From Octopus bimaculoides (Eukaryota), in contig NC_068989.1 in the NCBI RefSeq assembly GCF_001194135.2, positions 76,278,552 through 76,333,440 of the forward strand: a stretch of 54,889 nt of DNA, in the 5' to 3' direction. The translations under genes and the position numbers were made by a program. Position 1 is the first letter of the stretch. Each line of letters opens with the position of its first letter. This document shows positions 1,117 to 50,202 of the stretch, piece by piece. A model generated the notes under the pieces. The model ran no database searches and was not told where the DNA came from. It saw only the letters and a program-made list of their open reading frames with translations.

Positions 1117-1183
1117 GGCTTGAAAAATTGTTAAGACACTATTATACTTTCCTCTTTTTCTTAACATGAAACCAATGGTAGCT
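1117..1183 (+). ncRNA. Decayed type I hammerhead ribozyme relic
   Basis: ggc-TTGAAAA-(at)tgttaaga...tcttaaca(t)-GAAA-ccaatgg-TA-gct. 8-bp helix II, near-palindromic helix III, GUA site; two core substitutions. Confidence 0.45.
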
Positions 1184-4100
1184 TCAATTCACAAATAAAG
1201 AAATTATATCCCTCCATGCGGTGTTGAGCACACATTTTCATCGTTCGACATTTACTCATATATATATATATATATATATANNNNNNNNNNNNNNNNNNNN
1301 NNNNNNNNNNNNNNNNNNNNNNNNNNNNNNNNNNNNNNNNNNNNNNNNNNNNNNNNNNNNNNNNNNNNNNNNNNNNNNNNNNNNNNNNNNNNNNNNNNNN
1401 NNNNNNNNNNNNNNNNNNNNNNNNNNNNNNNNNNNNNNNNNNNNNNNNNNNNNNNNNNNNNNNNNNNNNNNNNNNNNNNNNNNNNNNNNNNNNNNNNNNN
1501 NNNATATAATATATACTTGAGTTTGTGTGATTGCGCATATAAGAATATATTAATCCATGAAATTAATCAATGAAACCTAGTCTAATTTTTATGATAATAG
1601 AATATTATGCCTTTATTTTGATTCAAAAAACTAGGACTTCCATGCGTTATGCAATCTTCAGGTTTATGTAATAGTAGAGGCAGTTGTGTTCCACAATTGA
1701 CAATTCACACACACACACATACGCACATGCATTGTGTTCTGTAGTTCCACTTGAGGATGAGAAGCGCTAGAATATAAATGTTTGCTTCCAGTAATTTTCC
1801 CAATTTAAATTAGGATGTTCATTTGTAGCACAAGCAATCTCAGATTTGAAGTGCGGCGCTCCGCTTTCGGTCTCACTCGAGCCTTGTAGAAAACTAAGTC
1901 TAAATATGTAAGGAGCAGTCTCTAGGGTCCAGTGTTTCCGTATCGGGAGAAGCCAGCAGAAAGCGTTAGTGATTGCGAGACATAACATTTGTTACGACGT
2001 TGATGGTTTTTGGTGCGCGTTGATGATGAATTTAGGTTGTCGAATGAAAGTCTGCAGGCTTAATTCGCCAACAAGTTCGAATCTCTTTTAAGATATGATC
2101 TCCACAGTAGTTTACAATAGATAATTTAGCATATACACACCATGATATGGCAATGCTTTTATGTAAAACATAGAAAAGATAGTCTGCAGTAAGAAATAGC
2201 ACTTTGGTCACGATCATTCTTTTATAGTCTGGTCAAGAAATAACTTTACCAATCAGACACTAAAATGTACTGGATTTAATTGAATCCACTCACTTCTTTT
2301 TAATTGAGAAAGATACTTTATTGGTGTATATTTTGCATCAACGTGGTTTCTTATCCGATTCCACTGTAGGACACCTTGGACATGTGACTGCTATCAAGGC
2401 GTTAAAAACAAAATTCAGTAAGCAGAAAATATGCAGAATCCTTCAAAATGACCGCTTCAATTTTGGGAAGGTAATATTAACCTGTTTCTTTGTTTAACAG
2501 CACTACCTGCCTCTTGCATGTATTTAGCGTAGTACACTCGGTGATTGCAAATATTCAGGTGGGGTTTCTTTTCTGGGGACAACTTTTACATTCTTCCCGC
2601 CAATCATAAAGGTTCTAGGGAATTACATAGGGCGTTCCTAAATGCAATTAGATGCACAGTGCAACTGCATGGAGGATTTTGCAACATACATATATAACAA
2701 TTGAAGAACTTCTGAGCCAATATCTGATACTAATTAATGGCAGGAAGAATAGTACTACATTAGTTGAGTGTTTAAATATTTTGGGAAGAATAGTTTAACA
2801 AAGTAGCTATTTACAATCGACACACTAATTTTTAAAACATTTTTACGTTTGGTAAGATTTAAAATCGTTGTTTCGAATCATTCTTTTCTACTTTTTGTGA
2901 ATATTATTTTGAGAAAAAAAAAAAAAAAACAATGTGAAAACTGATATATGCAATGATAATCTTTTTTTTTTAAGCAGTATGAAATAAATAAATACTAACG
3001 AGAAAGCTGTTTGCTTTTGGACTGTTGTACATTGGTAAGTTTGTAAAAAACGAAAGTGAACACTTTAAGCAATCAGAGTGAACGGTACTTAACCTTTTCC
3101 CCTAGTGATAGCTACCACTTATTTCTTCGTAGTTGACAGTTTTAATTTTAGCTCGTATTCAACCAGTAAAAAATATTTGTGGTTTCAAATCATAGTATCA
3201 TTCTATTTTGGAAGTGTTCATTGATTCACATGGATGGAAAAAAAAACAACTGAATTTCAAGAGTTGATGTACCTTTGTACTAACATACTATCTCCGAAAA
3301 TATTGTCCTCATGTAGTTTATTGTAGATAATTAGTTCTGGCGATTTGATCCCCCTTTAAGCTAACTATTATGGCTAGAAATCATAGGGATATAAACGAAG
3401 GGAAATAAAGTAAGTCAATGAAGAATCGAAATTGTGTCCCAGATTCGGCTGGTGAAGAGTATGCAATTACTATATAACAACTTAACCAGAAGTTTACAAC
3501 CGTTGTACCTCGACACAACTATTAGCCGTGTATAGCCCGCAGATGTAAACATAGATTTGGAGGCGAATCGGAAAATTTTAGGATATTCAGAAAACTGCAT
3601 ACGATATTATTCAGCGTGCCATGATTTGAAAAAACTTTGGGCTGGACGATAAAATGAACACCAGGGAAAATTTGCAGTCTTGGAGAAAAGACATTGTCTT
3701 ACGCCCAGCATTTATTTATCTATTCATTTATCTATTCAATAGCAAAGCTATTGATAATATAAACCATTGCCAATTTACATTTCCGAAACCAACAAATGTG
3801 GATATTCTTTAACAATGCAGTTTTATTATAATACGGTTTATACTAAAGCAGTCCCCACTATTCTTGCATCAAATAAAATAATTTAATTTGATTAGCGAGG
3901 AAGTTTCACCTAGCGAGAGGCCATTTTAGTAAAATTGATAGTACATCTGTTTGGGTTTCGAAACAGGCAAGCAACTTTCTGCGCCTTTTCCATCCAAAGT
4001 TTTCACTCAATATACTATAAGTTATTTATAGCTAAATTCGCTTCAAGACACATCTTAAATAAAGACGTCCTTTCATATTTCTCGTATACTTTAACTTTAG

Positions 4101-4340
4101 TATTCTTAATACAATGTAATTTGATTTTGATTTGTTTAATATTTCTTTCTAATGCAAGAAACTCATAACTATTTTCAAATCATCAATATAAGCAAACAAC
4201 GAGATGTTGTTGCCTTGTTTTAATTTCCATCTAGTTATGATTTATATGCAAATGAAATTTTAAAATAGTAAGGATCATTAATTAGATGTAATTAGATGCA
4301 AATATTTTCAAAAGAGAATGAGCATAGTTGAATACCTCCC

Positions 4341-4597
4341 CCCAGCAATTTCGTGGGAAGGTGTTAGTCGATTGGATCGACCCAAATACTCAACTGGCAC
4401 TTATTTTACCGACCCCGAAAGGATGAAAAGCAAAGTCGATCCCGGCGGAATTTAGTGTCTTGAAAGTTTTGATTCCAAATTTTGGCACGAGTCCAGCAAT
4501 TTCCACCTCGTTGGAATTTAAACTTAGAATGTATAGACAAACGAAAGGCCGATAAGCATTTTGTCTGGCATGCTCACGATTCTGCCAGCTCACAGCC
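4341..4597 (-). mobile_element. tRNA-derived SINE (family B here), internally rearranged
   Basis: The reverse complement has the GAGCTGGCAGAATCG head, the CTTTCATCCTTTCGGGGTCG body and the AAATTGCTGG..GTGCCAAAATTTG tail, but in head-tail-body order. Confidence 0.75.
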
Positions 4598-5145
4598 TTT
4601 AGTGTCTTAGAAATATTGACATGAGTATCAACGAGGAAGGATTTTGCAAAGCTCATGATACATAGTGACACTTAATAGTGGTTATAGCAAATTGTGCGGT
4701 AGTGTAGCATTTGTTGTATAAGGCACAAAGGGTCTAGTATGCAAGAAAAGGAAGCAGTCACATGTCCGTGTTGGTCAGCACGCATAATTTCCTGTGATGG
4801 ATGGGTCCTTTCTTCGATAAATATCTCCGTTCGGAATACCCTGAGTAGGATAAGTTTATTTTTAACTCCTTTATGGATTCCCTAGTATTTACAAGAGAAT
4901 AGCTGAAAATTGATGATTCATCCTTATGTTCAAAATTATAAATAAATTTTTCCCGGTTGAATAAGATATTAAGCATTACATATGCAAGTAACAAAATATA
5001 GAGATTATGCTAGACAACTATTTTGAAATAACAAATGGCTCTCACACTAAACTAGTATTTGCAGATTATTGTCTTAATGATAACATCATTTTTGTTTTCT
5101 TGAATGAGCTGCAAATGTGAATCGTAAAATAATAGCAAATCTAAC

Positions 5146-6254
5146 GTCGCGGCAGCACACTGTGTGATTAATGAATGGCGGCTGCACACTGTGTGATTAA
5201 TGAGTGGCGGCTGTACACCGTGTAATTAATGAGTGGCGGCTGCACATTGTGTAATTAATGAGTGGCGGCTGCACACTGTGTAATTAATGAGTGGCGGCTG
5301 CACACTGTGTAATTAATGAGTGGCGGCTGTACTACACTGTGTAATTAATGAGTGGCGGCTGCACACTGTGTAATTAATGAGTGCNNNNNNNNNNNNNNNN
5401 NNNNNNNNNNNNNNNNNNNNNNNNNNNNNNNNNNNNNNNNNNNNNNNNNNNNNNNNNNNNNNNNNNNNNNNNNNNNNNNNNNNNNNNNNNNNNNNNNNNN
5501 NNNNNNNNNNNNNNNNNNNNNNNNNNNNNNNNNNNNNNNNNNNNNNNNNNNNNNNNNNNNNNNNNNNNNNNNNNNNNNNNNNNNNNNNNNNNNNNNNNNN
5601 NNNNNNNNNNNNNNNNNNNNNNNNNNNNNNNNNNNNNNNNNNNNNNNNNNNNNNNNNNNNNNNNNNNNNNNNNNNNNNNNNNNNNNNNNNNNNNNNNNNN
5701 NNNNNNNNNNNNNNNNNNNNNNNNNNNNNNNNNNNNNNNNNNNNNNNNNNNNNNNNNNNNNNNNNNNNNNNNNNNNNNNNNNNNNNNNNNNNNNNNNNNN
5801 NNNNNNNNNNNNNNNNNNNNNNNNNNNNNNNNNNNNNNNNNNNNNNNNNNNNNNNNNNNNNNNNNNNNNNNNNNNNNNNNNNNNNNNNNNNNNNNNNNNN
5901 NNNNNNNNNNNNNNNNNNNNNNNNNNNNNNNNNNNNNNNNNNNNNNNNNNNNNNNNNNNNNNNNNNNNNNNNNNNNNNNNNNNNNNNNNNNNNNNNNNNN
6001 NNNNNNNNNNNNNNNNNNNNNNNNNNNNNNNNNNNNNNNNNNNNNNNNNNNNNNNNNNNNNNNNNNNNNNNNNNNNNNNNNNNNNNNNNNNNNNNNNNNN
6101 NNNNNNNNNNNNNNNNNNNNNNNNNNNNNNNNCGGCTGTACTACACTGTGTAATTAATGAGTGGCGGCTGCACACTGTGTAATTAATGAGTGGCGGCTGT
6201 ACTACACTGTGTAATTAATGAGTGGCGGCTGCACACTGTGTAATTAATGAGTGC
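5146..6254. repeat. 29-bp minisatellite (31-bp variant) spanning an N gap
   Basis: Unit GTGGCGGCTGCACACTGTGTAATTAATGA repeated on both sides of the gap at 5385-6132. Confidence 0.95.
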
Positions 6255-13034: not shown

Positions 13035-13968
13035 GTAACAATTAGAAAATGGACGATAATATGCTGAACCCAACTACTTGCAGACAGTGTATCCCGTTGA
13101 ATTCAATAATTTAATTCATACCAAAAGTGACCAAAAAAAGAAAGAAAAAGAAAGAAAGAACCAAAGCACAAGTGTCTATGGCAGACTATGTTATTTTGCC
13201 AACCTGGTTTACATATAGAAGTACAAAGTACATAAGGAATTAGAGGATGGACAGAAGTTTAATCTTACAGCTGTTTAGGCCTAGTTTTAGCAGGCCCCAT
13301 TCTATCCGAATATTCCTTTCCGGAGTGATTATCGGATGACATTTTGAAATGGGGTTACATGCCCGAACCGCTAGGCCTCTTCAGAGATTCACAAAGGGTT
13401 TCATACAAATGTAGAGCAAGAGGCAAAAACAGAGGTGTGGTAGAGACCAGAGGAAAAACAACAGCAAAAATAAGATAGAAATAAAAATAAAAAATAGAAT
13501 TAAAATCAAAATCAAAATAAAAATAAGGGTACAGCAGGAGAAAAAAAAAATAATAAAGAATACATAAATGAAAAATGAAGGTATAGCATGTGGGACATGG
13601 AAAAATATAAAAAAGATATATGTTAAAAAACCCTTAAAAATACAAGGCACACAAAGAGCCTACAGACATTATAAATAGGTAGCTATAGACACTCCAATGC
13701 ATATNNNNNNNNNNTGGGTTCTTGTGCACAACCTTACTCGGATGTCCCCTTACTCCCATGTGTGCATATACAAGTTTTTATAACAGCTTTCTAGATACGG
13801 CTAATAGCGCTGATGCCACAAACAACGTATGTGGTGGAATGTATGCTTATAAAAACTTGTATATGCACACATGGGAGTAAGGGGACATCCGAGTAAGGTT
13901 GTGCACTCGAACCCACACATATATATATGTGTGGTTCAGCATATTATCGTCCATTTTCCAATTGTTAT
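13035..13968. repeat. Nested fold-back element
   Basis: Outer inverted repeat 13035-13070 / 13933-13968. Inner 69-bp arms 13715-13783 / 13847-13915 with 2 mismatches. Confidence 0.85.
13261..13389 (-). ncRNA. Type I hammerhead ribozyme with long helix II, G12U variant
   Basis: aatct-CTGAAGA-ggcctag...ctaggcc-TAAA-cagctg-TA-agatt. Helix I 5 bp, helix II 7 bp plus extension, palindromic helix III ACAGCUGU. Confidence 0.8.
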
Positions 13969-13999
13969 ATATATATATATATATATTTAAAATCAGATC

Positions 14000-14268
14000 A
14001 ATAATAACAGACAATGGACAATTGTCAACTCATTACAGCTGTTTCTTACACATTTTTAAATAGAAGAATGAAACAAAAGGATATCCCAAGAATACATCAG
14101 GAACGCGTCTGAAGTCTGTATTCATGGGATATCCTTTTATATGTAAAATTATGATTCATCTAGAGATTACAGTTTTTTGTAATCAAGTAATCTTCTCAGT
14201 CTTCTATTTAAAAATGCATAAGAAACAGTTGTAATGAGTTGACAAATTATCCATCGTCTGTTATTATT
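14000..14268. repeat. Fold-back element carrying a degenerate hammerhead (14154-14239, plus strand)
   Basis: Arms 14000-14067 / 14200-14268 and inner arms 14075-14095 / 14118-14138. Motif attcat-CTAGAGA-tta...taa-GAAA-cagttg-TA-atgagt. Confidence 0.75.
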
Positions 14269-14545
14269 CATTTGATTATAATACACCAAGGGCATTTACG
14301 ACTTATCGGACATCCAAGAGTATAGCAGCAACGTACAATTTAACGAAGCGACTGCTTTGAACTAGCCGCTAGGCGCTAAATACTCATAGGCTTAGTTTTC
14401 TCTGTGTACACAAGCGGAATATCCTGTTTGATACTTACCAGTCATTGGCCAGAACCACAGGTTTATCCAACCAAACCTGGTGCAAATCTTCTCAACTACC
14501 TGATTCTATCCGAATCCTTATTTTACTCTCTCTCCAGCTCTCCCT

Positions 14546-15155: not shown

Positions 15156-15549
15156 TTGTTGTTGTTGTTGGCACTCCGTCGCTTACGACGTCGAGGGTCC
15201 CAGTTGATCCGATCAACGGAACAGCCTGCTCGTGAAATTAACGTGCAAGTGGCTGAGCACTCCACAGACACGTGTACCCTTAACGTAGTTGTCGGGGGAT
15301 ATTCAGCGTGACACAGTGTGACAAGGCTGGCCCTTTGAAATACAGGTACAACAGAAACAGGAAGAAAGAGTGAGAGAAAGTTGTGGTGGAAGAGTACAGC
15401 AGGATTCGCCACCGTCCCCTGCCGGAGCCTCGTGGAGTTTTATATGTTTTCGCTCAATAAACACTCACAACGCTCGGTCTGGGAATCGAAACCACGATCC
15501 TATGACCGCGAGTCCGCTACCCTAATCACTGGGCCATTGCGCCTCCACT
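15156..15549 (-). mobile_element. tRNA-Arg-derived SINE (family C) with 11-bp TSD
   Basis: TSD CAGTAGGACAG at 15145-15155 and 15550-15560; tRNA-like head with a CTCGCGG loop; (CAA)n tail. Confidence 0.92.
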
Positions 15550-24895: not shown

Positions 24896-24905
24896 NNNNN
24901 NNNNN

Positions 24906-25463: not shown

Positions 25464-26599
25464 GTGAGTATATTTCAATTATTTCTGATTTAGGATCATC
25501 GGATTATAAATTCACTAGATACTGCATTCAATATATGAAAAGTTCATATAATCATACACACATATATGAATGAGAATGCATGCATATGTATGTAAAAGTA
25601 TAATGATATGTGAAGAAATTTATATACAGGATTCGTCCAAAGGAAAATTCTCACTGGTGATGGACGGATCATTAATTTTGTATATAGTCTACTTCTCCCG
25701 TTTGTTTAACCTCACGTATATTTAAGATGCAGATGAATTTAAAAGAAGTGCACATTTGAAAGTGTTCCCATGCCTTGAATGTCTGGCATGGTCTGACTCG
25801 AAGAATGAAACTTTGATTGTTGAGCTCACGTTGACATGGGTGGGCATTAGGGTGTGAGCCCCAAACAAGAAAAACTCAAAATATTGTGGGATGGATAAAG
25901 ATGGCGGTTTACTGCGCTTCGAGTAGAGGTGACGTATTATGACTTAGTAGCTAGATTCGCTGTGCCCCACCTCGCTGCCATCAAACATAAGTTATTCCTA
26001 GATTGAAGTAGGAATTCTCAAAAAGGACATGTCATAAACTAGAGAGTAACGAACAAATTATTAGTAAGCAAATAATAAATAAATAAATAACTGTTGCATG
26101 GTTGGAGAGGTTCCAGTTGTGTCCGATTTGGTGTCGTAGTTATATATAATAGAAGTTTCTATGCCCTTTCGTACTGCTGGAGCAACCCATACTTTCAGTC
26201 GGTGCTGAAATCGTTATGATGTATGGTTGACAGCTGATGAAGGAAGTATCCTGCAGTGCCAACTGTATATAATACATGAGTGTGTGTCTGTGTGTGTATG
26301 TGTTTGTGTGTGTAACTGCGTATGTGTGTGCGTGTGCATAAACGATGGATAGTGTGATCTGAGGCACATTACATCAAGAAACATGACAGTGTGGTCATGC
26401 CTGGAACACCTTGAAACAAACCTGCTCATTAAGGCTGACACAAGACTAAACAGCAACAAGTACCACAATTAACCCCCCCACCACTACCACCAGCGTCAGC
26501 ACCACAAATACTACCACTATCACAACAACAACAACAGCACCAACAACATTAGTACAGTATACTATTAATAAACACTCTGGTGTTCAGATCCATAAGGCG

Positions 26600-34184: not shown

Positions 34185-34955
34185 TTTTGACATTGAAATG
34201 TTATATAGTGAATAGTAGATTGCGACGCAGTTGTTGATACATACGTATCGCTTTGTATTAATGACCACGTCGATTCTAATACTCATATATATGCAGAAAA
34301 GTATTTGTTTCGTTGATGTTCAGCCTTGATGTCATATCAGATATTTTGTTTAAATTTCCTGCAACTCATCCTCGTGCTGTAAAGCTATATACCCATATCA
34401 CTACATCTCTTGTTTAAACATTATCTGCTCAAAAGACAGCTGACGGTCCTGTTTTCAACTTGATAAATGACGGAATACCCCGGGTAACTGTAGTTACAAG
34501 ATTAGTACTTTTTAATTTTAAGATTAAGCTTATCACTACTTAGATATTTTTGTTAATGCTTTAGTTCAATGGTTCTTCTTAGGTCCTTTTCTCTTGCATT
34601 CCCCAAAGACAGTTTCTATCTGGGTATAATATATTTAACGCGCGATTCGTTAGTTTAACCAAGGAATTACTCCTTAGATATATACAACACACTTGAGGAC
34701 TTTAGTGGCGAGCATGATCTCACTGCTGTCTTCATAATATTTATTGTTAACCTCGCTGGTCATTGTCAAGGAGGGTACAACAATGACGAGACATGAGCTG
34801 TCAAGTTTTCTCAAGTTTTTACGTGGTAGCTTGGCATCCTCATGAATCATTTTGCGTGTAAAACTTTGTCTTAATATCAATGACAACTTTATGTTTTGTT
34901 CAATTAAAACTGGTGACAATGTTATGCTTTGTTTAATATATACATAACTAATGAC

Positions 34956-37019: not shown

Positions 37020-37051
<32 letters not shown>

Positions 37052-37262
37052 TAATATAGGATAGCAAATTTTTGAAATTTCACTACCGGTGGTCTAGCAT
37101 TAGACAACATATTCTATATAAAATTAGTGTACATTTAAACACAAAGAGGCGACCCTTAGCAGGCAGCCTTACATGCTAGAAGGAGCAGTCAAATCATCCA
37201 AAACCACATTTAAGAGCAATTTCGAAGGGAATGAAAAATAAAAACTTTTACCTTGTTTTTTT

Positions 37263-37339
37263 ACAGCCATACCTACTAATTTCGAACACTAATTAGCAAA
37301 TAAAATAATTTTCTCGGCGAAGTTCTCATCAGTGGCTAC
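37263..37339 (-). ncRNA. Type I hammerhead ribozyme, intact catalytic core
   Basis: gtagcca-CTGATGA-gaac...gttc-GAAA-ttagtagg-TA-tggctgt. Helix I 7 bp (two GU), helix II 4 bp with G10.1-C11.1, GUA cleavage triplet. Confidence 0.82.
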
Positions 37340-37365
37340 ACCAAAACACTAACATATAATTTAGA

Positions 37366-37540
37366 GACGTGTCTCTTCATTATACATCATAATAACACGT
37401 GTCTCTTCATTATATATTATAATAACACGTGTCTCTTCATTATATATCATAATAACACGTGTCTCTTCATTATATATTATAATAACACGTGTCTCTTCAT
37501 TATATATTATAATAACACGTGTCTCTTCATTATATATTAT
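37366..37540. repeat. 30-bp minisatellite, about 6 copies
   Basis: Unit ACACGTGTCTCTTCATTATATATTATAATA. Confidence 0.95.
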
Positions 37541-37757
37541 GATTTTTCAAATTCACCGCGCAAGCGCGGTTTCAATCGGCAGTAGATGAAAAATGCCATA
37601 TTAGCTTCCGAAATTTCTAAAATCATATTCATAAATTAATACAGGATAGCAAAATTCTAGAATTTTAGCCTTACATGCTAGAAGGAGCAGGTAGGCCACT
37701 AGTACTGAAATTTCTAAAAGTTTGCTATCCTATATTGATTTATGAATATGATTTTAG

Positions 37758-37838
37758 TAGTGGTTAAGAGCGCGGGCTACTAACCCCAAGATTCCGGGTT
37801 CGATTCCAGGCAGTGACCTGAACAACAACAACAACAAC

Positions 37839-37879
<41 letters not shown>

Positions 37880-38085
37880 CAACAACAACATCAAAAAATA
37901 CCTTAGGAATGAGAACCCAGGTTCAAAATTTCCCCAAGACACCTGATGAAGGCTGGAGGATACATCAGCCGAAAACTTGTGTTAACAACAAACAAGATGA
38001 GGACAAATATCCGTCAAATATAAATAATGTAAATAATGTAAATAAGGTACATAGTTCCTCATCTCTTAAATATAGAACTGAACAA
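37758..38085 (+). mobile_element. tRNA-headed element with (AAC/AAT)n and a minimal hammerhead (37938-37983)
   Basis: A-box remnant TAGTGGTTAA, anticodon-like loop CTACTAA, B box GGTTCGATTCC (37797-807); then gacac-CTGATGA-a-ggctg...cagcc-GAAA-ac-TT-gtgtt. Confidence 0.72.
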
Positions 38086-38185
38086 TGTATTTGTTTTAAA
38101 TATCAGTTGTTTGTTTTACATAATTTATTTGCTATTTGTTGATTGGCGATATTGGTTAATACTTTTATTCTTGTTTAAACTAAAG

Positions 38186-38438
38186 GTACTTATTCTGGTG
38201 TGACTGGGGTGTAAATCCTAAAATCGAAGTGTCAGATCTGGTTGGCAACAACCGGCGTCCTATTGTCAGTAATAATATGCGAAGGCCACGTGGATTAGTC
38301 ATTGATGCTAAAGAAAGCATGATCTACTGGGTTGACGATGGCCAAGATACAATTGAATGTATTCAATTCAACGGACGTGCGAGACGAACTCTTGTAGAAG
38401 ATCCTCAGGCTGATTTCTATGGAATAGCTTTGTACAAG
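38186..38438 (+). CDS. LRP-like gene exon B (YWTD blades)
   Basis: AG at 38184-85, GTaagt at 38439. GG|G junction with exon A gives PQKG-YLFWCDWGVNPKIEVSDLVGNNRRPIV...PRGLVIDAKESMIYWVDDGQDTIE...FYGIALYK. Phase 2 to 0. Confidence 0.93.
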
Positions 38439-41681: not shown

Positions 41682-41992
41682 GTGAGAACATTACCCGATC
41701 TGACTCAATTGCATGTTTATAACATAAAATATTCGGAATAAATGAAAAATATTTAAACTCTTTTTACATACATTTTGAAACGATGCGCTCATTGTTTTTT
41801 GACACCGCTCTTAAACATCTGCTGGACATTTGATTAAAGGTTTTCTAGTCGATACCATCTCGCTTGTTCTTTTTGAGACATAAACTATCTATCTGCACTA
41901 TTCGTTGCATTCTTTTCTCTATCTTTTCTTTTAGAGAGATTAAGTTGTCATTTGAGATCGACTGTTATTTATAGAATGTTTAGTGATGATGT

Positions 41993-42374
41993 GTGGAGGC
42001 GCAATGACCCAGTGGTTAGGGCAGCGGCCTCGCGGTCATAGGATCGCGGTTTCGATTCCCAGACCGGGCGTTGTGAGTGTTCATTGAGCGAAAACACTTA
42101 GAGCTCCACGAGGCTCCGGCAGGGGATGGTAGCGAACCCTGCTGTACTCTTTCACCACAACTTTCTCTCAGTCTTACTTCCTGTTTCTGTTGTGCCTGTA
42201 ATTCAAAGGGTCAGCCTTGTCACACTGTCACACTGAATATCCCCGAGAACTACGTTAAGGGTACACGTGTCTGTGGAGTGCTCAGCCACTTGCACGTTAA
42301 TTTCACGAGCAGGCTGTTCCGTTGATCGGATCAACTGGAATCCTCGACGTCGTAAGCGACGGAGTGCCGACAAA
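41993..42374 (+). mobile_element. Family C SINE with 11-bp TSD
   Basis: TSD AGTGATGATGT at 41982-41992 and 42375-42385. Confidence 0.93.
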
Positions 42375-42797
42375 AGTGATGATGTAAAAGGCTCCTTTGT
42401 TAGTTCACATTTTAAAATGCATTACTAATTGCATGGGTTCTGACTTCCGATTTTATTCATTTAAACGTCTACTTTTATGTTTGTGTTTTTTTTTTTTTTT
42501 GTTCAAAGTTTATTCCGCTACATTCATGCAAATTGATTCGACTGAGAAGCCACTGCAATCAACACATCACTGCATCTTGCATAGGAGGTAGATCAACATT
42601 AACTTCTTTCCTGCCATGTGATAGGTTGATTAGTGTTATTTGTTTCGGCTTTCTGCGCAGTGTACTAAAATCCTGCTGATGTCAACTTAGCCATTTCATA
42701 CTCTGGAGAACGATAAAGTAAATACTGCATGCACCTTGACTGACAGGTGGATGTAGTGACCTGGCTAACGGTGGTGAGCCTATTTTGTTATCGCAAA

Positions 42798-43115
42798 GGC
42801 ACGTGGGTTAGTGGTTAGGGTATTCGGCTCTCGATCGCGAGGTTGTGAATTCAATTCCCAGCGGTGTCTTGTGTTCTTGAGCAAGAAACTTTATTTCACG
42901 TTGCTCCAGTCCAGTCAGCTGGCAAAAATGAGTTATACCTGTGTTTCAAAGGGCCAGCCTTGTCACACTCTGTGTCACGCTGAATCTCCCTGAGAACTAT
43001 ATAAAGGGTACACGTGTCTGTGGAGTGCTCAGCGACTTGCTCGTTAATTTCACGAGCAGGCTGTTCCATTGGTGAATCAACTGGGACCCTCGTCGTCGTA
43101 ACTGACGGAGTGCCA
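42798..43115 (+). mobile_element. tRNA-derived SINE with CORE-like middle and the family C 3' tail
   Basis: Different head; middle GTGTTCTTGAGCAAGAAACTTTATTTCAC; tail TCAAAGGGCCAGCCTTGTCACAC...GACGGAGTGCCA shared with family C. Confidence 0.78.
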
Positions 43116-43953
43116 TTCATAATGTTATCGGATTCGTTAATTGTAGTATCTTGATAGCATCAATGAAACGATAGAATAAAAATATGCCTTTGCACTAAAG
43201 TGTGATAAATATAAGAATGGAAAGGAGGTGGCAAAACAGATCCCCCTCCTCTCCTCGCTGGTGGATTATCGACTTGTATTTAAAGCGTACACGAAATAAA
43301 AACGAAAGAAAAATATGAACAGTATATAAAGAAACATGATTTATGAATTTATAACCTTGCTGAATATAGTCTACAGTTATAACATCGCAGGAAGGAATTT
43401 TAGCAGCAGTTTCTATAACGTGAGCGACCGGGTATGAAGTGAAGTGCAAACAAAATGCAGTTGAAAACCTTCGGAAACTCTCAGTAATTCAAGCATATGT
43501 AAGGGAGAAAACTCAGAAGAGACAAGGGAGACTACTTTATCATTCCTTTCCCCCACTCTTTCTTTTGTCCTTGTAATAATTGGTTTTAACATGGGATGGT
43601 TTAGCAGAATCATTTGAATATCGAACAAAATGATTTGTGCTAGAATCTCCCCGCTCTTTATGTTCTTAGTACAAATCCACCTGACGGCAACATTGTATTT
43701 CGTCCTTTCAGATATACAGTTAACCAGTTGTTTGCACTTTGGAAATCTTACAACCTACAATATAAAATTAACATAAAAGAAAACAATGAAATTATTAATA
43801 TTTTTATTGTTTTAACATGTGGCAATTCGTCCGTCGCTAGGTTTTGAGTTCAAATTACGCCGAGGTCGACTTTTCCTTTCATCATTTCGGGTTCGATAAA
43901 ATAAGTACCAGTTGGATGTAATTCACTGACCCCAATTGTTGTTGTTGTTGTTG

Positions 43954-43991
<38 letters not shown>

Positions 43992-43993
<2 letters not shown>

Positions 43994-44429
43994 GGCGGCG
44001 AGCTGGTGGAATCGTTAGCATGCTGGCGAAATGCTTAGTGGTATTTCGCCCGTCGCTACGTTTTGGGTTCAAATCCCTCCGAGGTCAACTTTGCATTTCA
44101 TCCTTTCAGGGTCGATGAAATAAGCACCAGTGAAACACTGGGGTCAATGTAATCGATTTGTACCCTCAAAGAAAGGATTATCATTATTATTATTATTATT
44201 ATTACTATTATTATTAGGCAGCGAGCTAACAGAATCGTTAGCACGCCGGGCGAAATGCTTAGCGGCATTTCGTCTTTCTTTACGTTCTGAGTTCAAATTC
44301 CGCCGTAGTCGACTTTGCCTGTCATCATTTCGGGGTCGATAAATTAAGTACCAATTGCATACTGGGACCGATCTAATCGACTGGCCCACTTCCCCAAAAA
44401 TTTTGCGCCTTGTGCCAAGAGTAGAAAAG

Positions 44430-44430
<1 letters not shown>
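43992..44430 (+). mobile_element. Two head-to-tail family B SINEs separated by (TTA)n
   Basis: Heads at 43992 and 44216, each preceded and followed by (TTA)n. Confidence 0.88.
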
Positions 44431-44480
<50 letters not shown>

Positions 44481-45320: not shown

Positions 45321-45362
45321 ACACCTCTGATGAGAATCTTAATATTCGAAAATCAATTCAGA
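45321..45362 (+). ncRNA. Minimal hammerhead motif, full core but weak helix I
   Basis: acacct-CTGATGA-gaat-cttaat-attc-GAAA-atcaat-TC-aga. Confidence 0.5.
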
Positions 45363-45462
45363 TTTTTAATCACTTTTGCAACCTACGGAAATTTAGCTAA
45401 ATTATCCCTGTTTATAAATCTTCTGTATAGGTTACACATAAACGATAATAATTACTAGTATT

Positions 45463-45870
45463 AAGGAGGTGGCGAGCTAGAAGAATCGTTAGTACGCTGG
45501 GCAAAATGCTTAGCGGCATTTCGTCCGTCCTTACGTCCAAAATCCGCCATGGGCAACTTTGCCTTTCATTTTTCGAGGTCGATAAATTAAGTTCCAAATG
45601 AGCGCTGCGTTCGATGTAATCGACTTACCCTTTCCCCGAAGTTACTGGCCTTGTGCCAAACTTTGAAACCATTATTAAGAAGGCAGTAGCTGGCAGAATA
45701 GGTAGCATATCAGAGAAAATACTTAGAAATATTCCGTTCGTGTACACATTCTGAGTTAAAATTTGCTTTTCGTGATCGTTGAAATCAGTACCAGTTGAGC
45801 ACTAGCGTCGATATAATCGACTTGCCCCTTCTCACCAAATTTTAGGCCGTGTACCTATAGTAGAAAGGGT
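45463..45870 (+). mobile_element. Two head-to-tail family B SINEs
   Basis: Heads at 45463 and about 45677; (TTA)n/(TTTA)n tail follows. Confidence 0.82.
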
Positions 45871-45896: not shown

Positions 45897-45927
<31 letters not shown>

Positions 45928-45945
45928 TTTTTTTCCATGTAACAG

Positions 45946-46099: not shown

Positions 46100-46560
46100 G
46101 TAAGTGAGACATTTCTTGATATTATATAACATTAGCAGAATTAGTAGGTTAGTAAAGTCGGTAGAATAATGGACAAAATGTTTAGTTGTCTTTATCGTTC
46201 CTTTTTTTTTTTTTTTTAACCTTCCGAGTTCAAATTCCACCGAAGTCATCTTCGCGTTTTATCATTTCGACTTTGCCGAAATAAGTGCCAGTTATATGTA
46301 CAGGGAAAAAGCGTCAATATAATCTATTATTATATTTTCCTTCCAAAGTTATATCTGTGCTAGGAATCATTGACGAATCTATAGACATTCGGTCGATTTC
46401 TATTATTTATTTTTGTTCCTCTCGACTTTGTGTACTTTCGTTCAGAATTTAAGTTTGTTTTTTTTATGAAAGCTTTCAAGCCAGCTGTCTGCAATATGGG
46501 GATGTAATATGAGTCTAGTCGAATTAATCAAGAACACCCTTCATTATTAAAGTTGGCATC

Positions 46561-46780
46561 AAGACGTCGAGCTGGCAGAATCTATGGTACGCTGGATGAA
46601 ATACCTAGCAGTATTTCGTCCGTCGCTACATTCTGAGTTCAAATTTCGCTGTGGTCAACTTTGCCTTTCAGCCTTTCGGGGTCAATAAATTAAGTACCAG
46701 TTGAACACTGGGGTCGATGTAATCGACTCATTCCCTCCCCACAAATGGCTGCCCTCGTGGCAAAATTTGAAACCATTATT
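46561..46780 (+). mobile_element. Family B SINE
   Basis: GAGCTGGCAGAATC head, CCTTTCGGGGTCAATAAATTAAGTACCAG body, GCAAAATTTGAAACCATTATT tail. Confidence 0.85.
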
Positions 46781-47488
46781 AAAGTTGGTCTTGTGTTTAA
46801 TTGAATACAATAACGAAAAAAAAAATAGACTACAATAGACTGAGATGTTATCCAAAGAAAGGTTACTCCTTTACACCATAAAGAAAGTTGCTAAGCACCG
46901 AGATTTAAAAATCCTCTGGGCGAGGGTACTTAGAAGACATTACCTCACAGTCCCTTTACTTGATAAAAATGAAAACTATTGTTTAAATGTCATCCAAAGG
47001 GAGATTTATCGTTAATCATCACCTTACCCTTTAAACAAGTTAATAAAAGCCTTATAAAGAGCCTCTAGGAAGGAGTTTATAAAATATTTCGTTACGTTTT
47101 ATTTAAATGGAAGAAACTAATTGTTAAATATTAGATTCTTTTGATGTATCATTTACTTTACATTAGGCCACTATTATCTATGTTGCTGGCTGTTCTGTTG
47201 GAGCAACCTCAGAACGGTGATTGTTGTAATATATTACTCACAGTAGCCATTGTCAGTAGAATCAACACTTTTCTACTGAAATACTGGCTTTCCGCTAACT
47301 ATTCGCAACGTCAACCCACTCAAAATGTAAGCTGTAAAATGAACACCATTCAATGAATGCATCATAGTTTGCGGTTGCTGAATAAGATTAGTGTAATGAC
47401 TTTAAATAAGTCAAAGGAAACAAGTTATTACATTTTAAGTGATTGTCATTATTTAGTTACTTTACATAGTGAGTTTAAATCTAAACGT

Positions 47489-47850
47489 TAGGGCAGCGGA
47501 CTCGCGGTCATAGGATCGCTGTTTCGATTCCCAGACCGGGCGTTGTGAGTGTTTATTGAGCGAAAACACCTAAAGCTCCACGAGGCTCCGGCAGGGAATG
47601 GTGGCGAACCCTGCTGTACTCTTTCACCACAACTTTCTCTCACTCTTACTTCCTGTTTCTGTTGTGCCTGTAATTCAAAGGGTCAGCTTTGTCACACTCT
47701 GTGTCACGCTGAATATCCCCGAGAACTACGTTAAGGGTACGCGTGTCTGTGGAGTGCTCAGCCACTTGCACGTTAATTTCACGAGCAGGCTGTTCCGTTG
47801 ATCAGATCAACTGGAACCCTCGACGTCGTAAGCGACGGAGTGCCAGCAAC
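47489..47850 (+). mobile_element. Family C SINE, 5'-truncated
   Basis: TTAGGGCAGCGGACTCGCGG...GACGGAGTGCCAGCAAC. Confidence 0.9.
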
Positions 47851-48777
47851 ACACACATANNNNNNNNNNNNNNNNNNNNNNNNNNNNNNNNNNNNNNNNN
47901 NNNNNNNNNNNNNNNNNNNNNNNNNNNNNNNNNNNNNNNNNNNNNNNNNNNNNNNNNNNNNNNNNNNNNNNNNNNNNNNNNNNNNNNNNNNNNNNNNNNN
48001 NNNNNNNNNNNNNNNNNNNNNNNNNNNNNNNNNNNNNNNNNNNNNNNNNNNNNNNNNNNNNNNNNNNNNNNNNNNNNNNNNNNNNNNNNNNNNNNNNNNN
48101 NNNNNNNNNNNNNNNNNNNNNNNNNNNNNNNNNNNNNNNNNNNNNNNNNNNNNNNNNNNNNNNNNNNNNNNNNNNNNNNNNNNNNNNNNNNNNNNNNNNN
48201 GTCATTATATTCTGTAGGTTGTTTGAACTTCACACTATAAGTAGACGTTTTTGTCCATATATGGCAACATAAAGAAATTATTCACGCGTATATCTTTTAG
48301 ATCCTAATTAAAGAATGTTGAAGATTTAAAGAAATGTCTTGATGACAGATTTTTATAATTTTGAAAGAAAGAATTTAAAACGTAAGAATTTTGGCTCTGA
48401 GTTTGCTGAGCATGGAAGAAGCAATTCTTCCCAGTAGAGAAACCTGGACGAAATGCCGGCAACAGAATAAATTCCGTTAAAGGTTCAACTGCGAGAAATG
48501 AAGAGGATTACAAATTAACTCCAACACTCAAATGATGATTGAATCGAGAAGAAAGCAGCTTGGATCATTGATCGATTATTAACCTCTTCGATAATGACGA
48601 GAAATAAAAATTGTAAAAATCAAAAATTATGTTTGCATTCACAGAGTAGGAACGCCTATCGCACTCTTGGTTTCGAATATAATAAATTATTTGAAGAAAT
48701 TCTTTTTAGGAAATATAGTTATGCATTACATGTTGAATGTGTCATCAATTTATTTTACATATTGATCTATATTGCAG

Positions 48778-48912: not shown

Positions 48913-49060
48913 GTAAGTAGACCTAAAACAAATAAACCACCAACAAACTGACCTATCACGGTTGACCGACCCAAACAACTACGGAAGCATACAAAATTCA
49001 TATATCTGTTTTAACAAACATTCAAAATTACAATATTAACTACTTATTTATATTTTCATT

Positions 49061-49140
<80 letters not shown>

Positions 49141-49282
49141 ACACACAGACACACGCGCGCATATATCTATATATAGATACATATATACACACATACATCC
49201 AAAGAATAATTAGATACGTTTTGAAATTTAAAATCCATTCATCTTCTTTCTCTTGACATATTTCTTCTTTTATTGTTTCCAG

Positions 49283-49394
49283 TTTATACTGGGCCGATTC
49301 TGCTTTGGGAAACGTGAAAGAATACAATTTCTCAACAGAAATTATTACAGTCTTGGTTCCAAAGAATAGTGGAATCGAAGGATCGATATACGGC
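49283..49394 (+). CDS. LRP-like gene exon H (3' end lost in N gap)
   Basis: tgtttccAG at 49281-82. ILYWADSALGNVKEYNFSTEIITVLVPKNSGIEGSIYG, then the frame runs into the gap at 49395. Confidence 0.88.
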
Positions 49395-50113
49395 NNNNNN
49401 NNNNNNNNNNNNNNNNNNNNNNNNNNNNNNNNNNNNNNNNNNNNNNNNNNNNNNNNNNNNNNNNNNNNNNNNNNNNNNNNNNNNNNNNNNNNNNNNNNNN
49501 NNNNNNNNNNNNNNNNNNNNNNNNNNNNNNNNNNNNNNNNNNNNNNNNNNNNNNNNNNNNNNNNNNNNNNNNNNNNNNNNNNNNNNNNNNNNNNNNNNNN
49601 NNNNNNNNNNNNNNNNNNNNNNNNNNNNNNNNNNNNNNNNNNNNNNNNNNNNNNNNNNNNNNNNNNNNNNNNNNNNNNNNNNNNNNNNNNNNNNNNNNNN
49701 NNNNNNNNNNNNNNNNNNNNNNNNNNNNNNNNNNNNNNNNNNNNNNNNNNNNNNNNNNNNNNNNNNNNNNNNNNNNNNNNNNNNNNNNNNNNNNNNNNNN
49801 NNNNNNNNNNNNNNNNNNNNNNNNNNNNNNNNNNNNNNNNNNNNNNNNNNNNNNNNNNNNNNNNNNNNNNNNNNNNNNNNNNNNNNNNNNNNNNNNNNNN
49901 NNNNNNNNNNNNNNNNNNNNNNNNNNNNNNNNNNNNNNNNNNNNNNNNNNNNNNNNNNATATATATATATATATATATATGAGTTCAGCAAACATTTAGA
50001 TTCGGGTGAATATGGTACTTAAGTTGAGACACCAGAATTTAGTACGGTATTATCCATAAATTTCAAAGTAAAGTGATTAAAATCAAGATAAACAACAAGG
50101 ATATCCAGAGGTA

Positions 50114-50202
50114 ATGCAGTACGATCGTTTCATGCGACACCATTTAATTGAACAATGTAATCATTGCATCAATTTAAACTGCAGAGCAATTCTCAGCTGC
50201 AT
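50114..50202 (-). ncRNA. Type I hammerhead, one core change
   Basis: atgcag-CTGAGAA-ttgc...gcat-GAAA-cgatcg-TA-ctgcat. Perfect 6-bp helix I, palindromic helix III ACGAUCGU; helix II closing pair is imperfect. Confidence 0.72.

What the first reader, a model, noticed from the sequence alone, without database searches (positions are those of the whole stretch)
1117..50202. Dense population of type I hammerhead ribozymes in and near fold-back elements: a candidate Penelope-driven retrozyme system
Seen: about nine motifs with helix I - CUGANGA - helix II - GAAA - helix III - UH - helix I' topology. Full core at 37263-37339(-), 37938-37983(+) and 45321-45362(+). One core change at 13261-13389(-) and 50114-50202(-). 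Decayed at 1117-1183(+), 14154-14239(+), 26230-26266(+) and 34436-34491(+). Their helices are unrelated in sequence, so they belong to several families. Three have palindromic or near-palindromic short helix III (ACAGCUGU, ACGAUCGU, ACCAAUGGU). Established: Penelope-like elements carry minimal type I hammerheads in their pseudo-LTRs, palindromic helix III allows dimeric folding, and non-LTR retrozymes give circular RNAs. Inference: a diverse non-autonomous hammerhead retroelement population, possibly mobilised by Penelope RT. Within the gene, the copies with the strongest helix I are antisense, while sense copies have minimal helix III or weak helix I, as expected if sense-strand cleavage of the pre-mRNA is selected against.
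Basis: partly seen in the sequence, partly recalled or inferred. Interest (0 to 1): 0.85.

Follow-up and report, generated by a model that had tools for sequence, protein, structure and literature searches.

The report
One decayed Penelope hammerhead, mostly look-alikes
Of nine proposed self-cleaving hammerhead RNA motifs, one is a real but decayed leftover of a known Penelope-type jumping gene, three cannot be settled and five look like chance, so this is ordinary genome debris and not a new ribozyme system.

Summary
The nine strings are at the stated coordinates and none contains N, but they are not a dense hammerhead population. CUGANGA occurs 28 times against 22.3±4.5 in shuffles. Motifs with up to two core defects number 13 against 7–8 expected.

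One motif is real by descent. Site 37937–37984(+) is 82% identical to the hammerhead flanking the closest related Penelope-like element (PLE). It scores 42 bits (E≈5e-9) against a covariance model built from 20 PLE hammerheads from other loci. It is the "min-HHR" type described in 2014, but its palindromic ACGU, needed for the dimeric helix III, reads AACU. It sits in a ~120-bp solo 3′ PLE fragment.

A degraded PLE lies at 22.4–24.5 kb(−) without hammerheads.

Site 37262–37340(−) is the only full three-helix match (p≈0.01–0.02), but its hammerhead fold is 8.6 kcal/mol above the minimum-energy fold.

Sites 13261–13389(−) and 50114–50202(−) carry inactivating core defects and 60–100-nt helix II spans. 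The other five look like chance.

No tandem, retrozyme-like arrangement exists. This kind of element is already known.

The parts
37937..37984 (+). Decayed Penelope-type minimal hammerhead (min-HHR). Helix I is GACAC/GUGUU. The core is CUGAUGA, followed by an unpaired A. Helix II is GGCUGG/UCAGCC. GAAA follows. Positions 15.1–16.1 read AACU instead of the palindromic ACGU, and H17 is U.
   Evidence: blastn gives 82% identity over 67 nt to both flanks of the PLE in L001. Alignments A1 and A2. Covariance model R1, built without the window: 42.2 bits, E=5e-9 with filters off. The min-HHR descriptor hits it only if one palindrome mismatch is allowed.
37909..38030 (+). Solo 3′-terminal PLE fragment (pseudo-LTR end) that carries the min-HHR. 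It is bounded upstream by an (AAC)n(AAT)n microsatellite. Homology ends about 50 nt after the cleavage site, where the L001 pLTR repeat also ends.
   Evidence: Alignment A1. Repeat limits within L001. No PLE coding sequence is adjacent. Severe 5′ truncation and microsatellite targets are typical of PLEs (PMC8557442).
22433..24506 (-). Degraded canonical EN+ Penelope-like element (RT plus C-terminal GIY-YIG). The reading frame is broken by frameshifts near 24040–24060, 23430–23480 and 22580–22600, and by an in-frame stop near 23082. Both ends run into microsatellites or assembly gaps (24896–24905; 22167–22205). No hammerhead is retained.
   Evidence: Six-frame translation. Relatives up to 68% identical carry RVT_1 and GIY-YIG. 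tblastn. DNA homology to L001, L003 and L004. No R1 hit in the flanks.
50697..50740 (+). Core is CUAAAGA (G5→A), followed by an unpaired A. Helix II is GGAAU/AUUCC. Then GAAA, AUAU (an ACGU in which both CpG positions have decayed) and U, with helix I AUAU.
   Evidence: R1 gives 21.7 bits, E=0.0017 with filters off. The calibration is rough and the sequence is AT-rich (GC 0.20). No flank homology was found.
37262..37340 (-). Hammerhead-like string with a full core and three contiguous helices. It is unverified and lies inside a fold-back/MITE-like composite (37040–37757), next to a 30-bp tandem array.
   Evidence: It is the only strict descriptor hit. About 0.01–0.02 such hits are expected per window. 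MFE is −14.5 kcal/mol and is not the hammerhead fold; the hammerhead-constrained fold is −5.9. No Rfam or R1 hit. Context.
13261..13389 (-). Near-miss motif. CUGAAGA; helix II is 7 bp closing an ~86-nt imperfect hairpin; UAAA (G12→U); palindromic ACAGCUGU; helix I is 5 bp.
   Evidence: No Rfam hammerhead hit at E≤10 in a 1.1-kb search. No second copy in the window.
50114..50202 (-). Near-miss motif. CUGAGA (N7 missing); helix II is only A-U, U-A; GAAA; palindromic ACGAUCGU; helix I is 6 bp.
   Evidence: No Rfam hit in a 0.8-kb search. No second copy in the window.
14154..14239 (+). Not a hammerhead. The core has two mismatches (CUAGAGA). The 3′ half, GAAACAGUUGUAAUGAGU, is part of one arm of a 300-bp fold-back (13985–14285). 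The mirror arm lacks any core or helix I.
45321..45362 (+). Not a hammerhead. The core and a 4-bp helix II are present, but helix I is at most 2 bp.
26230..26266 (+). Not a hammerhead. CUGAUGA and a 4-bp hairpin are followed by GCAG instead of GAAA.
   Evidence: R1 gives 10.8 bits, E=1.4.
34436..34491 (+). Not a hammerhead. It reads CUGACGG (A9→G) and AUAC instead of GAAA.
   Evidence: No hit in any scan.
1117..1183 (+). Not a hammerhead. There is no CUGANGA (it reads CUUGAAAAA) and helix I is at most 3–4 bp.
   Evidence: No hit in any scan.

Best explanation
The window is a repeat-rich, microsatellite-rich stretch of an animal genome. It includes introns of an LRP-like gene on the + strand.

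It holds one degraded Penelope-like element at 22.4–24.5 kb(−). About 13.5 kb away, on the other strand, lies a ~120-bp solo 3′ end of another PLE insertion (37909–38030). That fragment carries a minimal hammerhead of the kind found in PLE pseudo-LTRs.

How the active form is thought to work (from the literature, not shown here): two tandem copies of the motif pair through the palindromic A15.1-C-G-U16.1 to build an intermolecular helix III. This forms a dimeric ribozyme that cuts after H17 and may trim PLE transcripts.

What is shown for the window copy: it keeps the catalytic core, the unpaired base after A9, G10.1–C11.1, a 6-bp helix II and a 5-bp helix I. It has AACU in place of ACGU and has no tandem partner. 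I infer that it is an inactive relic.

The other eight listed motifs are not a ribozyme population. Five are chance look-alikes. One (37262–37340) is a lone statistical outlier that is not predicted to fold as a hammerhead. Two (13261–13389, 50114–50202) are near-misses with inactivating core defects and very long helix II spans.
For: Homology:
- Window 37940–38006 matches both flanks of the L001 PLE at 82% identity (E about 1e-12 to 1e-13).
- The same motif lies beside PLE ORFs in L002, L003, L004 and L005.

Architecture:
- The motif matches the published min-HHR features: an unpaired nucleotide between 9 and 10.1, G10.1–C11.1, a long helix II, a short helix I and palindromic 15.2–16.2 (PMC4209133).

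Positive controls:
- My min-HHR descriptor finds 26 hits in 85 PLE loci (378 kb); 25 of the 26 have the extra nucleotide.
- Model R1, built from 20 of them, finds 58 hits at E<0.01 in those loci. Most are on the ORF strand, roughly 100–500 nt downstream of the RT-EN match.
- Helices I and II are 89.7% paired against 56.5% in shuffles and 20–39% when the partner is slid.

The window:
- R1 with filters off gives one strong hit (42.2 bits) and one weak hit (21.7 bits). Everything else has E>1.
- Helix II shows a C-G→U-A double change relative to L001.
- ACGU is the majority at 15.1–16.1 among the 53 aligned hits; the window reads AACU.

Chance tests and other checks:
- Searches give the motif counts against shuffles and decoy cores.
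- No type II or type III hammerheads were found.
- No hammerhead-bearing tandem units were found.
- Site 1 energetics are.
Against: - Site 1 is rarer than chance for a single window (p≈0.01–0.02).
- Sites 4 and 5 together exceed a palindromic-helix-III null: 2 against 0.06 expected, with 0 of 270 decoy cores and 1 of 300 shuffles reaching 2. That descriptor was tuned after seeing the sites.
- Three −/+ pairs of motifs lie 500–800 bp apart: sites 1 and 2, sites 4 and 7, and site 5 with 50697. PLE hammerheads are known to occur in such pairs (PMC4209133).
- The species' genome could not be searched, so family membership of sites 1, 4 and 5 is untested.
- Both helix II changes in site 2 are CpG transitions, so the 'compensation' could be coincidence.
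- R1 E-values are rough.
- Cleavage was not assayed.
Confidence: 0.8

Rival explanations
1. The window holds a diverse population of non-autonomous, hammerhead-bearing retroelements (retrozymes), partly embedded in fold-backs and mobilised by Penelope RT. Selection acts against sense-strand ribozymes in the host gene.
For: A PLE and one genuine PLE hammerhead relic are present. Site 1 and sites 4/5 are nominally above chance. Motifs occur as −/+ pairs 500–800 bp apart. The link between retrozymes and PLE pLTRs is argued in bioRxiv 10.64898/2026.07.22.740005.
Against: - CUGANGA is not enriched, and the 'decayed' class is at chance level.
- No 170–400-nt tandem unit carries a hammerhead.
- The window's truly repeated short elements (385-bp ×5, ~220-bp ×6) carry none.
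- No candidate has a second copy in the window.
- Every candidate other than sites 1 and 2 has inactivating core defects or lacks a helix.
- Helix II spans of 60–100 nt are unlike the 53 PLE hammerheads aligned from other loci, which are all 40–49 nt long in total.
- Rfam detects a compact canonical hammerhead in L001 at 21.8 bits in a small search, but nothing at sites 1, 4, 5 or 7.
- The only verified motif is in the sense strand.
Confidence: 0.07
2. Sites 13261–13389(−) and 50114–50202(−), and perhaps 37262–37340(−), are single-copy relics of old canonical type I hammerheads with a short palindromic helix III. They would come from extinct PLE or retrozyme families and are now dead through core mutations and insertions in helix II.
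For: Both have perfect 8-nt palindromes (ACAGCUGU, ACGAUCGU) and all-Watson-Crick helices I of 5–6 bp with a single core defect. The count is 2 against about 0.06 expected. A perfect compact hammerhead of this style (ACACGUGU) exists in related locus L001 at 99–145(−).
Against: - The descriptor was defined post hoc. It had to allow an N7 deletion, a 2-bp helix II and a 120-nt span.
- By inspection, restricting helix II to a compact span like the verified ones would exclude both sites, whose helix II regions span about 60 and 100 nt.
- The true core is 1.2–1.6 times commoner than the average decoy.
- There is no homolog and no Rfam hit.
- The 12-mer that site 4 shares with the 13985–14285 fold-back does not extend beyond chance.
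Confidence: 0.12
3. Everything, including 37937–37984, is a chance resemblance.
For: Rfam reports no hammerhead anywhere in the window.
Against: Rfam also misses perfect min-HHRs beside PLE ORFs, so its silence is not informative for this class. Homology to PLE flanks in five independent loci, and 42 bits against an independent model, exclude chance.
Confidence: 0.01

Closest known systems
Minimal hammerheads (min-HHR) in the pseudo-LTRs of metazoan Penelope-like elements (Cervera & De la Peña 2014, PMC4209133)
   Same: Site 37937–37984 has the CUGANGA/GAAA core, the extra unpaired nucleotide between A9 and G10.1, the G10.1–C11.1 pair, a 6-bp helix II, a 5-bp helix I and no helix III hairpin. 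It is homologous to the motif flanking related PLE ORFs. It occurs as a dispersed single motif in a truncated PLE fragment, which the paper describes as the commonest situation.
   Different: Positions 15.2–16.2 are A·C (AACU) instead of the palindromic C-G (ACGU), so the intermolecular helix III of the dimer cannot form. There is no tandem partner and no adjacent ORF. It is a decayed copy, not a working member.
Canonical EN+ Penelope-like elements (Penelope/Poseidon, Neptune, Nematis; PMC8557442)
   Same: The element at 22433–24506(−) has RT followed by a C-terminal GIY-YIG. It is up to 68% identical to relatives that carry RVT_1 and GIY-YIG. It is embedded in microsatellites and assembly gaps, as is typical for PLE insertions.
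   Different: It has at least three frameshifts and an in-frame stop. Neither pLTR nor a hammerhead is recoverable. Its clade was not determined.
Metazoan non-LTR retrozymes (Cervera & de la Peña 2020, PMC7229834)
   Same: They use type I hammerheads with a short palindromic helix III and are thought to derive from PLE pLTRs.
   Different: Retrozymes are tandem units of about 170–400 nt, each with a hammerhead, and are expressed as circular RNAs. No such tandem unit with a hammerhead exists in the window, and its tandem and dispersed short repeats lack the motif.
Rfam hammerhead clan CL00010 (Hammerhead_1, Hammerhead_3, HH9, HH10, Hammerhead_II)
   Same: Site 37262–37340(−) has all conserved core bases and three helices in type I order.
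   Different: It does not reach even E≤10 in a 1-kb search. It has a 34-nt loop 2, a helix III made of one A-U and two U·G pairs, no loop–loop contacts, and a hammerhead fold 8.6 kcal/mol above the MFE.

Membership tests
PLE min-HHR (PMC4209133) — site 37937–37984(+) | Catalytic core C3U4G5A6N7G8A9, G12A13A14, A15.1, U16.1, H17 | tested here: met
   CUGAUGA … GAAA … U, then U as H17.
PLE min-HHR (PMC4209133) — site 37937–37984(+) | One unpaired nucleotide between A9 and G10.1 | tested here: met
   An A is present. 25 of 26 control hammerheads in PLE loci have this extra nucleotide.
PLE min-HHR (PMC4209133) — site 37937–37984(+) | G10.1–C11.1 and a long helix II (about 6–8 bp); short helix I (4–5 bp) | tested here: met
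   Helix II is GGCUGG/UCAGCC, 6 bp including one G·U. Helix I is GACAC/GUGUU, 5 bp.
PLE min-HHR (PMC4209133) — site 37937–37984(+) | Palindromic 15.2–16.2 that allows the dimeric helix III | tested here: not met
   The window reads AACU, whereas ACGU is the majority among the 53 aligned hits. The site is therefore filed as a decayed descendant, not a functional member.
PLE min-HHR (PMC4209133) — site 37937–37984(+) | Location in a PLE pseudo-LTR | tested here: met
   Met by homology: 82% identity to both flanks of the L001 PLE, and matches to motifs 100–500 nt downstream of the ORFs in L002, L003 and L005. In the window it is a solo fragment with no ORF beside it.
PLE min-HHR (PMC4209133) — site 37937–37984(+) | Self-cleavage as a dimer | not testable with these tools
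   This needs in vitro transcription of tandem constructs.
Canonical type I hammerhead (Rfam clan CL00010) — site 37262–37340(−) | Conserved core and three helices in type I order | tested here: met
   Strict descriptor hit with helix I 8 bp, helix II 4 bp and helix III 3 bp.
Canonical type I hammerhead (Rfam clan CL00010) — site 37262–37340(−) | Score against a curated covariance model | tested here: not met
   No hammerhead family hit at gathering score or at E≤10 in a 1-kb search. A compact control hammerhead scores 21.8 bits.
Canonical type I hammerhead (Rfam clan CL00010) — site 37262–37340(−) | The hammerhead fold is a stable conformation | tested here: not met
   MFE is −14.5 kcal/mol and is not the hammerhead fold. 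The hammerhead-constrained fold is −5.9 kcal/mol.
Canonical type I hammerhead (Rfam clan CL00010) — site 37262–37340(−) | Conservation or covariation in related copies | not testable with these tools
   There is no second copy in the window or in the 85 loci. The host genome is not searchable here.
Canonical type I hammerhead — sites 13261–13389(−) and 50114–50202(−) | Intact catalytic core (G12; seven-nucleotide C3–A9 strand) | tested here: not met
   Site 4 has G12→U. Site 5 lacks N7, and its helix II is only 2 bp without G10.1–C11.1.
Metazoan non-LTR retrozyme (PMC7229834) | Tandem repeats of about 170–400 nt, each carrying a type I hammerhead | tested here: not met
   The only tandem array in that size range (43959–44380, period 224) has no hammerhead. 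No candidate lies in a tandem unit.
Metazoan non-LTR retrozyme (PMC7229834) | Expression as linear and circular RNAs | not testable with these tools
   No transcriptome data are available here.
Canonical EN+ Penelope-like element — 22433–24506(−) | Single ORF with PLE-type RT followed by a C-terminal GIY-YIG endonuclease | tested here: met
   Translation shows RT motifs and …YSIPCSCGGLYKGETCRPLKIKVEEHR. 730 relatives were found, the best 68% identical; P0064 carries RVT_1 and GIY-YIG. The frame is broken in at least four places.
Canonical EN+ Penelope-like element — 22433–24506(−) | Pseudo-LTRs with hammerheads at the ends | tested here: not met
   No R1 or descriptor hit lies within 1 kb of either end. 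The expected positions fall in microsatellites and in gaps 22167–22205 and 24896–24905.

The most novel reading that the evidence does not exclude
Sites 37262–37340, 13261–13389 and 50114–50202 would be members of an undescribed class of hammerhead-bearing non-autonomous elements. In this class helix II has been expanded into a 35–100-nt fold-back, so the ribozyme is built into a fold-back/MITE-like element, and the elements are mobilised by the resident Penelope RT. A milder variant is that the PLE 3′ fragment at 37909–38030, together with the B-box-like sequence at 37757–37820, forms a tRNA-derived SINE that borrows the PLE tail and hammerhead.
Probability: 0.05. Interest if true: 0.55.

Novelty: already known. 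Interest (0 to 1): 0.13.

Why it matters
As it stands this is routine repeat annotation. The window holds a dead Penelope-like element and a dead copy of its well-described minimal hammerhead, inside an intron.

Two practical points are worth keeping:
1. Rfam's hammerhead models do not detect Penelope-type minimal hammerheads, not even perfect ones next to PLE ORFs. Scans that rely on Rfam alone will under-call this class. A small dedicated covariance model recovers these motifs cleanly.
2. Reading CUGANGA…GAAA patterns by eye in AT-rich, hairpin-rich sequence produces many false hammerheads. Scrambled-core controls in the same sequence are a cheap check.

If the three unresolved sites turned out to belong to real families, hammerheads with fold-back-expanded helix II would be a new variant worth pursuing. 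The evidence here makes that unlikely.

Tried and rejected
- Rfam at gathering score and at E≤10, on the whole window and on three ~1-kb pieces: only microsatellites and fold-backs hit miRNA models. I rejected Rfam silence as proof of absence after it missed perfect min-HHRs in L001–L005.
- Strict type II and type III descriptors: no hits.
- A hammerhead in the flanks of the window's own PLE: none. The expected positions lie in gaps or microsatellites.
- Possible homology between site 4 and the 13985–14285 fold-back, through the shared AAACAGCTGTAA: the extended alignment is not above shuffles.
- Second copies of sites 1, 3, 4 and 5 in the window and in related loci: none.
- Organism identification from a YWTD exon: only three unnamed hits.
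- Pfam scan of ten further ORFs: nothing useful.
- ARAGORN for the tRNA-like sequence at 37757–37820: no call.
- L001–L005 as assemblies of the same species: rejected, because the window's abundant young repeats are absent from them.

Full report
**1. The observation**

The window is 54,889 bases with 17 runs of N (5,116 N in total). None of the nine listed sites contains N, and the nearest gap is 98–2,498 nt away. Thirteen of the 17 gaps are flanked by a (TA)n, (CA)n, (GA)n or (TCTA)n microsatellite on at least one side, so the gaps mark collapsed simple repeats. They affect this finding only by hiding the ends of a transposon copy.

- Site 37262–37340(−) has every conserved base and three contiguous helices: helix I 8 bp, helix II 4 bp around a 34-nt loop, and helix III of A-U, U·G, U·G.
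- Site 37938–37983(+) has a full core, one extra A after A9 and no helix III hairpin.
- Site 45321–45362(+) has the core but a helix I of at most 2 bp.
- Site 13261–13389(−) has G12→U.
- Site 50114–50202(−) lacks N7 and has a 2-bp helix II.
- The four 'decayed' sites have two to four or more core defects.

**2. Is it more than chance?**

Rfam finds no hammerhead family at gathering score. It also finds none at E≤10 on the whole window, and none at E≤10 when only 37100–38100, 13200–14300 or 50000–50790 are searched.

I wrote descriptor scans and compared them with two controls: block-wise dinucleotide shuffles, and scrambled cores of identical composition run on the real sequence.

| Test | Observed | Expected |
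|---|---|---|
| CUGANGA occurrences | 28 | 22.3±4.5 |
| Full-core three-helix motifs | 1 | 0.01–0.02 |
| Up to one core mismatch | 2 | 0.5–0.6 |
| Up to two core mismatches | 13 | 7.3–8.4±3 |

So there is no dense population. The 'decayed' class is what AT-rich, hairpin-rich sequence yields by chance.

**3. What is really there: a Penelope-like element and one of its hammerheads**

Translation of 22.2–24.9 kb(−) gives an RT followed by a GIY-YIG motif (…YSIPCSCGGLYKGETCRPLKIKVEEHR). The frame is broken by frameshifts near 24040–24060, 23430–23480 and 22580–22600, and by a stop near 23082. A protein search returns 730 relatives. The best is 68% identical, and P0064 carries RVT_1 plus GIY-YIG. 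This is the only PLE coding fragment in the window.

I fetched five loci encoding close relatives. blastn against the window matched the PLE body as expected. The same motif lies beside the ORFs in L002, L003, L004 and L005.

Its form is CUGANGA, one unpaired A or C, a 6-bp helix II, then GAAACGU-Y and a 3–5-bp helix I. This is exactly the 'min-HHR' of metazoan PLE pseudo-LTRs. The published description lists an unpaired nucleotide between 9 and 10.1, a conserved G10.1–C11.1, a long helix II, a short helix I and palindromic 15.2–16.2 serving a dimeric helix III. It also reports frequent solo copies and pairs on opposite strands 100–700 bp apart (PMC4209133).

**4. Positive control and an independent model**

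A scan of metagenome contigs with a PLE protein alignment gave 80 more loci. A min-HHR descriptor finds 26 motifs in the 85 loci (378 kb), 25 of them with the extra nucleotide. In the window it finds none that is perfect, and only site 2 if one mismatch is allowed in the palindrome.

I built covariance model R1 from 20 of these motifs, with the window excluded.
- R1 finds 58 hits at E<0.01 in the 85 loci. Most are on the ORF strand, roughly 100–500 nt downstream of the RT-EN match.
- On the alignment of 53 hits, helices I and II are 89.7% paired, against 56.5% in shuffles and 20–39% when the partner is slid. That alignment is fitted to the model, which favours pairing.
- In the window with filters off, R1 gives 37937–37984(+) at 42.2 bits (E=5e-9), within the range of intact copies.
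- Nothing else has E below 1.

R1 E-values are rough because the calibration was shortened.

**5. State of the verified copy**

Relative to L001, helix II shows a C-G→U-A double change that keeps the pair. Both changes are CpG transitions, so this is only weak evidence for selection. The tetranucleotide at 15.1–16.1 is ACGU in the majority of the 53 aligned hits. Decayed copies read AUGU, ACAU or AAGU, and the window reads AACU. Two AACU strands can form only the two outer A-U pairs, so the dimeric helix III is lost.

Homology to L001 starts next to an (AAC)n(AAT)n microsatellite, at about 37909. It ends about 50 nt after the cleavage site, where the L001 pLTR repeat also ends. The fragment is therefore the extreme 3′ end of a 5′-truncated PLE insertion. 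That matches the described habits of PLEs: heavy 5′ truncation, partial tandem and inverted copies, short tails, microsatellite targets and assembly trouble (PMC8557442; PMC11167929).

The resident PLE at 22–24 kb has no hammerhead. The expected positions fall in gaps 22167–22205 and 24896–24905 and in microsatellites.

**6. The unresolved sites**

*Site 37262–37340(−).* It is a real outlier for one window (p≈0.01–0.02). Against it:
- Its MFE (−14.5 kcal/mol) is not the hammerhead fold, which costs 8.6 kcal/mol more.
- Helix III is neither stable nor palindromic, and loop 2 is 34 nt.
- It has no second copy.
- It lies inside a fold-back/MITE-like composite next to a 30-bp tandem array.

A genome of gigabase size would hold hundreds of such matches by chance.

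*Sites 13261–13389(−) and 50114–50202(−).* They share perfect 8-nt palindromes and clean helices I. A descriptor requiring a palindromic helix III and at most one core defect gives 2 hits against about 0.06 expected; 0 of 270 decoy cores and 1 of 300 shuffles reach 2. I tuned that descriptor after seeing the sites: it had to allow an N7 deletion, a 2-bp helix II and spans up to 120 nt. The true core is also 1.2–1.6 times commoner than the average decoy.
- Both sites have inactivating defects.
- Both have helix II spans of 60–100 nt, whereas all 53 aligned PLE hammerheads are 40–49 nt long in total.
- Rfam scores a compact canonical hammerhead in L001 (99–145, −) at 21.8 bits in a small search, but finds nothing at these sites.

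I put the chance that at least one of these three sites is a true relic at roughly 0.15–0.2.

*Site 14154–14239(+).* It lies in a 300-bp fold-back (13985–14285). The mirror arm keeps GAAACAGCUGUAAUGAGU but has no core or helix I, so that string is a feature of the repeat arm and not of a ribozyme.

**7. The interpretation**

The Penelope link is right for one motif. The retrozyme idea is not supported.
- No 170–400-nt tandem unit carries a hammerhead (definition from PMC7229834).
- The window's truly repeated short elements lack the motif. These are a 385-bp family with five copies at 92–95% identity and a ~220-bp family with about six copies.
- No type II or type III motifs exist.

The strand-bias argument cannot be evaluated. 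YWTD exons at 25120–25467 and about 38290–38410 place the host gene on the + strand, and the single verified motif is in the sense orientation.

**8. Verdict**

This is an ordinary, already described feature: a decayed min-HHR in a solo PLE 3′ fragment, near a degraded PLE. It is surrounded by chance look-alikes and three unresolved near-misses. What is shown here is the homology, the architecture, the model scores and the chance tests. What is inferred is the dimeric cleavage mechanism (from the literature) and the inactivity of this copy (from the broken palindrome and the lack of a tandem partner).

Noticed in passing
It reads CUAAAGA (G5→A), an unpaired A, helix II GGAAU/AUUCC, then GAAA-UA-U-U. 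R1 gives 21.7 bits, E=0.0017. The sequence is AT-rich, so the call is uncertain.
   Followed up: partly
L001 99-145 (-), and L001 388-429 (-) / 3338-3379 (+): Related locus L001 holds a perfect compact type I hammerhead with palindromic ACACGUGU, plus two perfect min-HHRs flanking its PLE. Rfam reports the first only as HH9 at 21.8 bits in a 421-nt search, and misses the min-HHRs entirely. Rfam is therefore blind to this class.
   Followed up: yes
window 15162-15551, 30528-30910, 41990-42375 (-), 47487-47851 (-), 42932-43115: A young dispersed repeat of about 385 bp occurs in five copies at 92–95% identity. It has no hammerhead motif, and its nature was not determined.
   Followed up: no
window 43819-44469, 45445-45678, 46558-46782, 51876-52097 (-), 4343-4453 (-): A ~220-bp repeat family with (ATT)n and a B-box-like GTTCAAATCCCG, which looks like a SINE. 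One tandem pair has a period of 224 at 43959–44380. It has no hammerhead motif.
   Followed up: no
window 37040-37757: A composite fold-back region. It includes a 141-bp MITE-like element (arms 37617–37666 and 37708–37757, 90% complementary), a related arm at 37040–37096 next to gap 36979–37019, and a 30-bp tandem array of 5.8 copies at 37367–37540.
   Followed up: partly
window 37757-37820 (+): A sequence with a tRNA B-box-like GGTTCGATTCC lies directly upstream of (AAC)n(AAT)n and the PLE 3′ fragment. It could be a SINE head. Neither ARAGORN nor Rfam calls a tRNA.
   Followed up: partly
window 13985-14285 and 13740-13890: A 300-bp fold-back whose two halves are 70% identical in inverted orientation, and a separate long, near-perfect hairpin that hits miRNA models by chance.
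   Followed up: partly
window 19144-22088 (+) and 29102-29620 (-): Non-LTR retrotransposon remains: an RT with a zf-RVT domain and a 15-bp tandem array at 19557–19636 beside a 10-N gap, and a separate RT fragment (RVT_1, E=1e-13).
   Followed up: no
window 25120-25467 (+) and about 38290-38410 (+): Two exons encode LDL-receptor class B (YWTD) repeats, so the host gene is an LRP-like gene on the + strand. Protein searches gave only unnamed relatives, and the organism was not identified.
   Followed up: partly
window 5149-5383 and 6133-6253: A 29-bp tandem array (GCGGCTGCACACTGTGTAATTAATGAGTG) continues on both sides of gap 5385–6132. The gap probably lies inside one long minisatellite.
   Followed up: no
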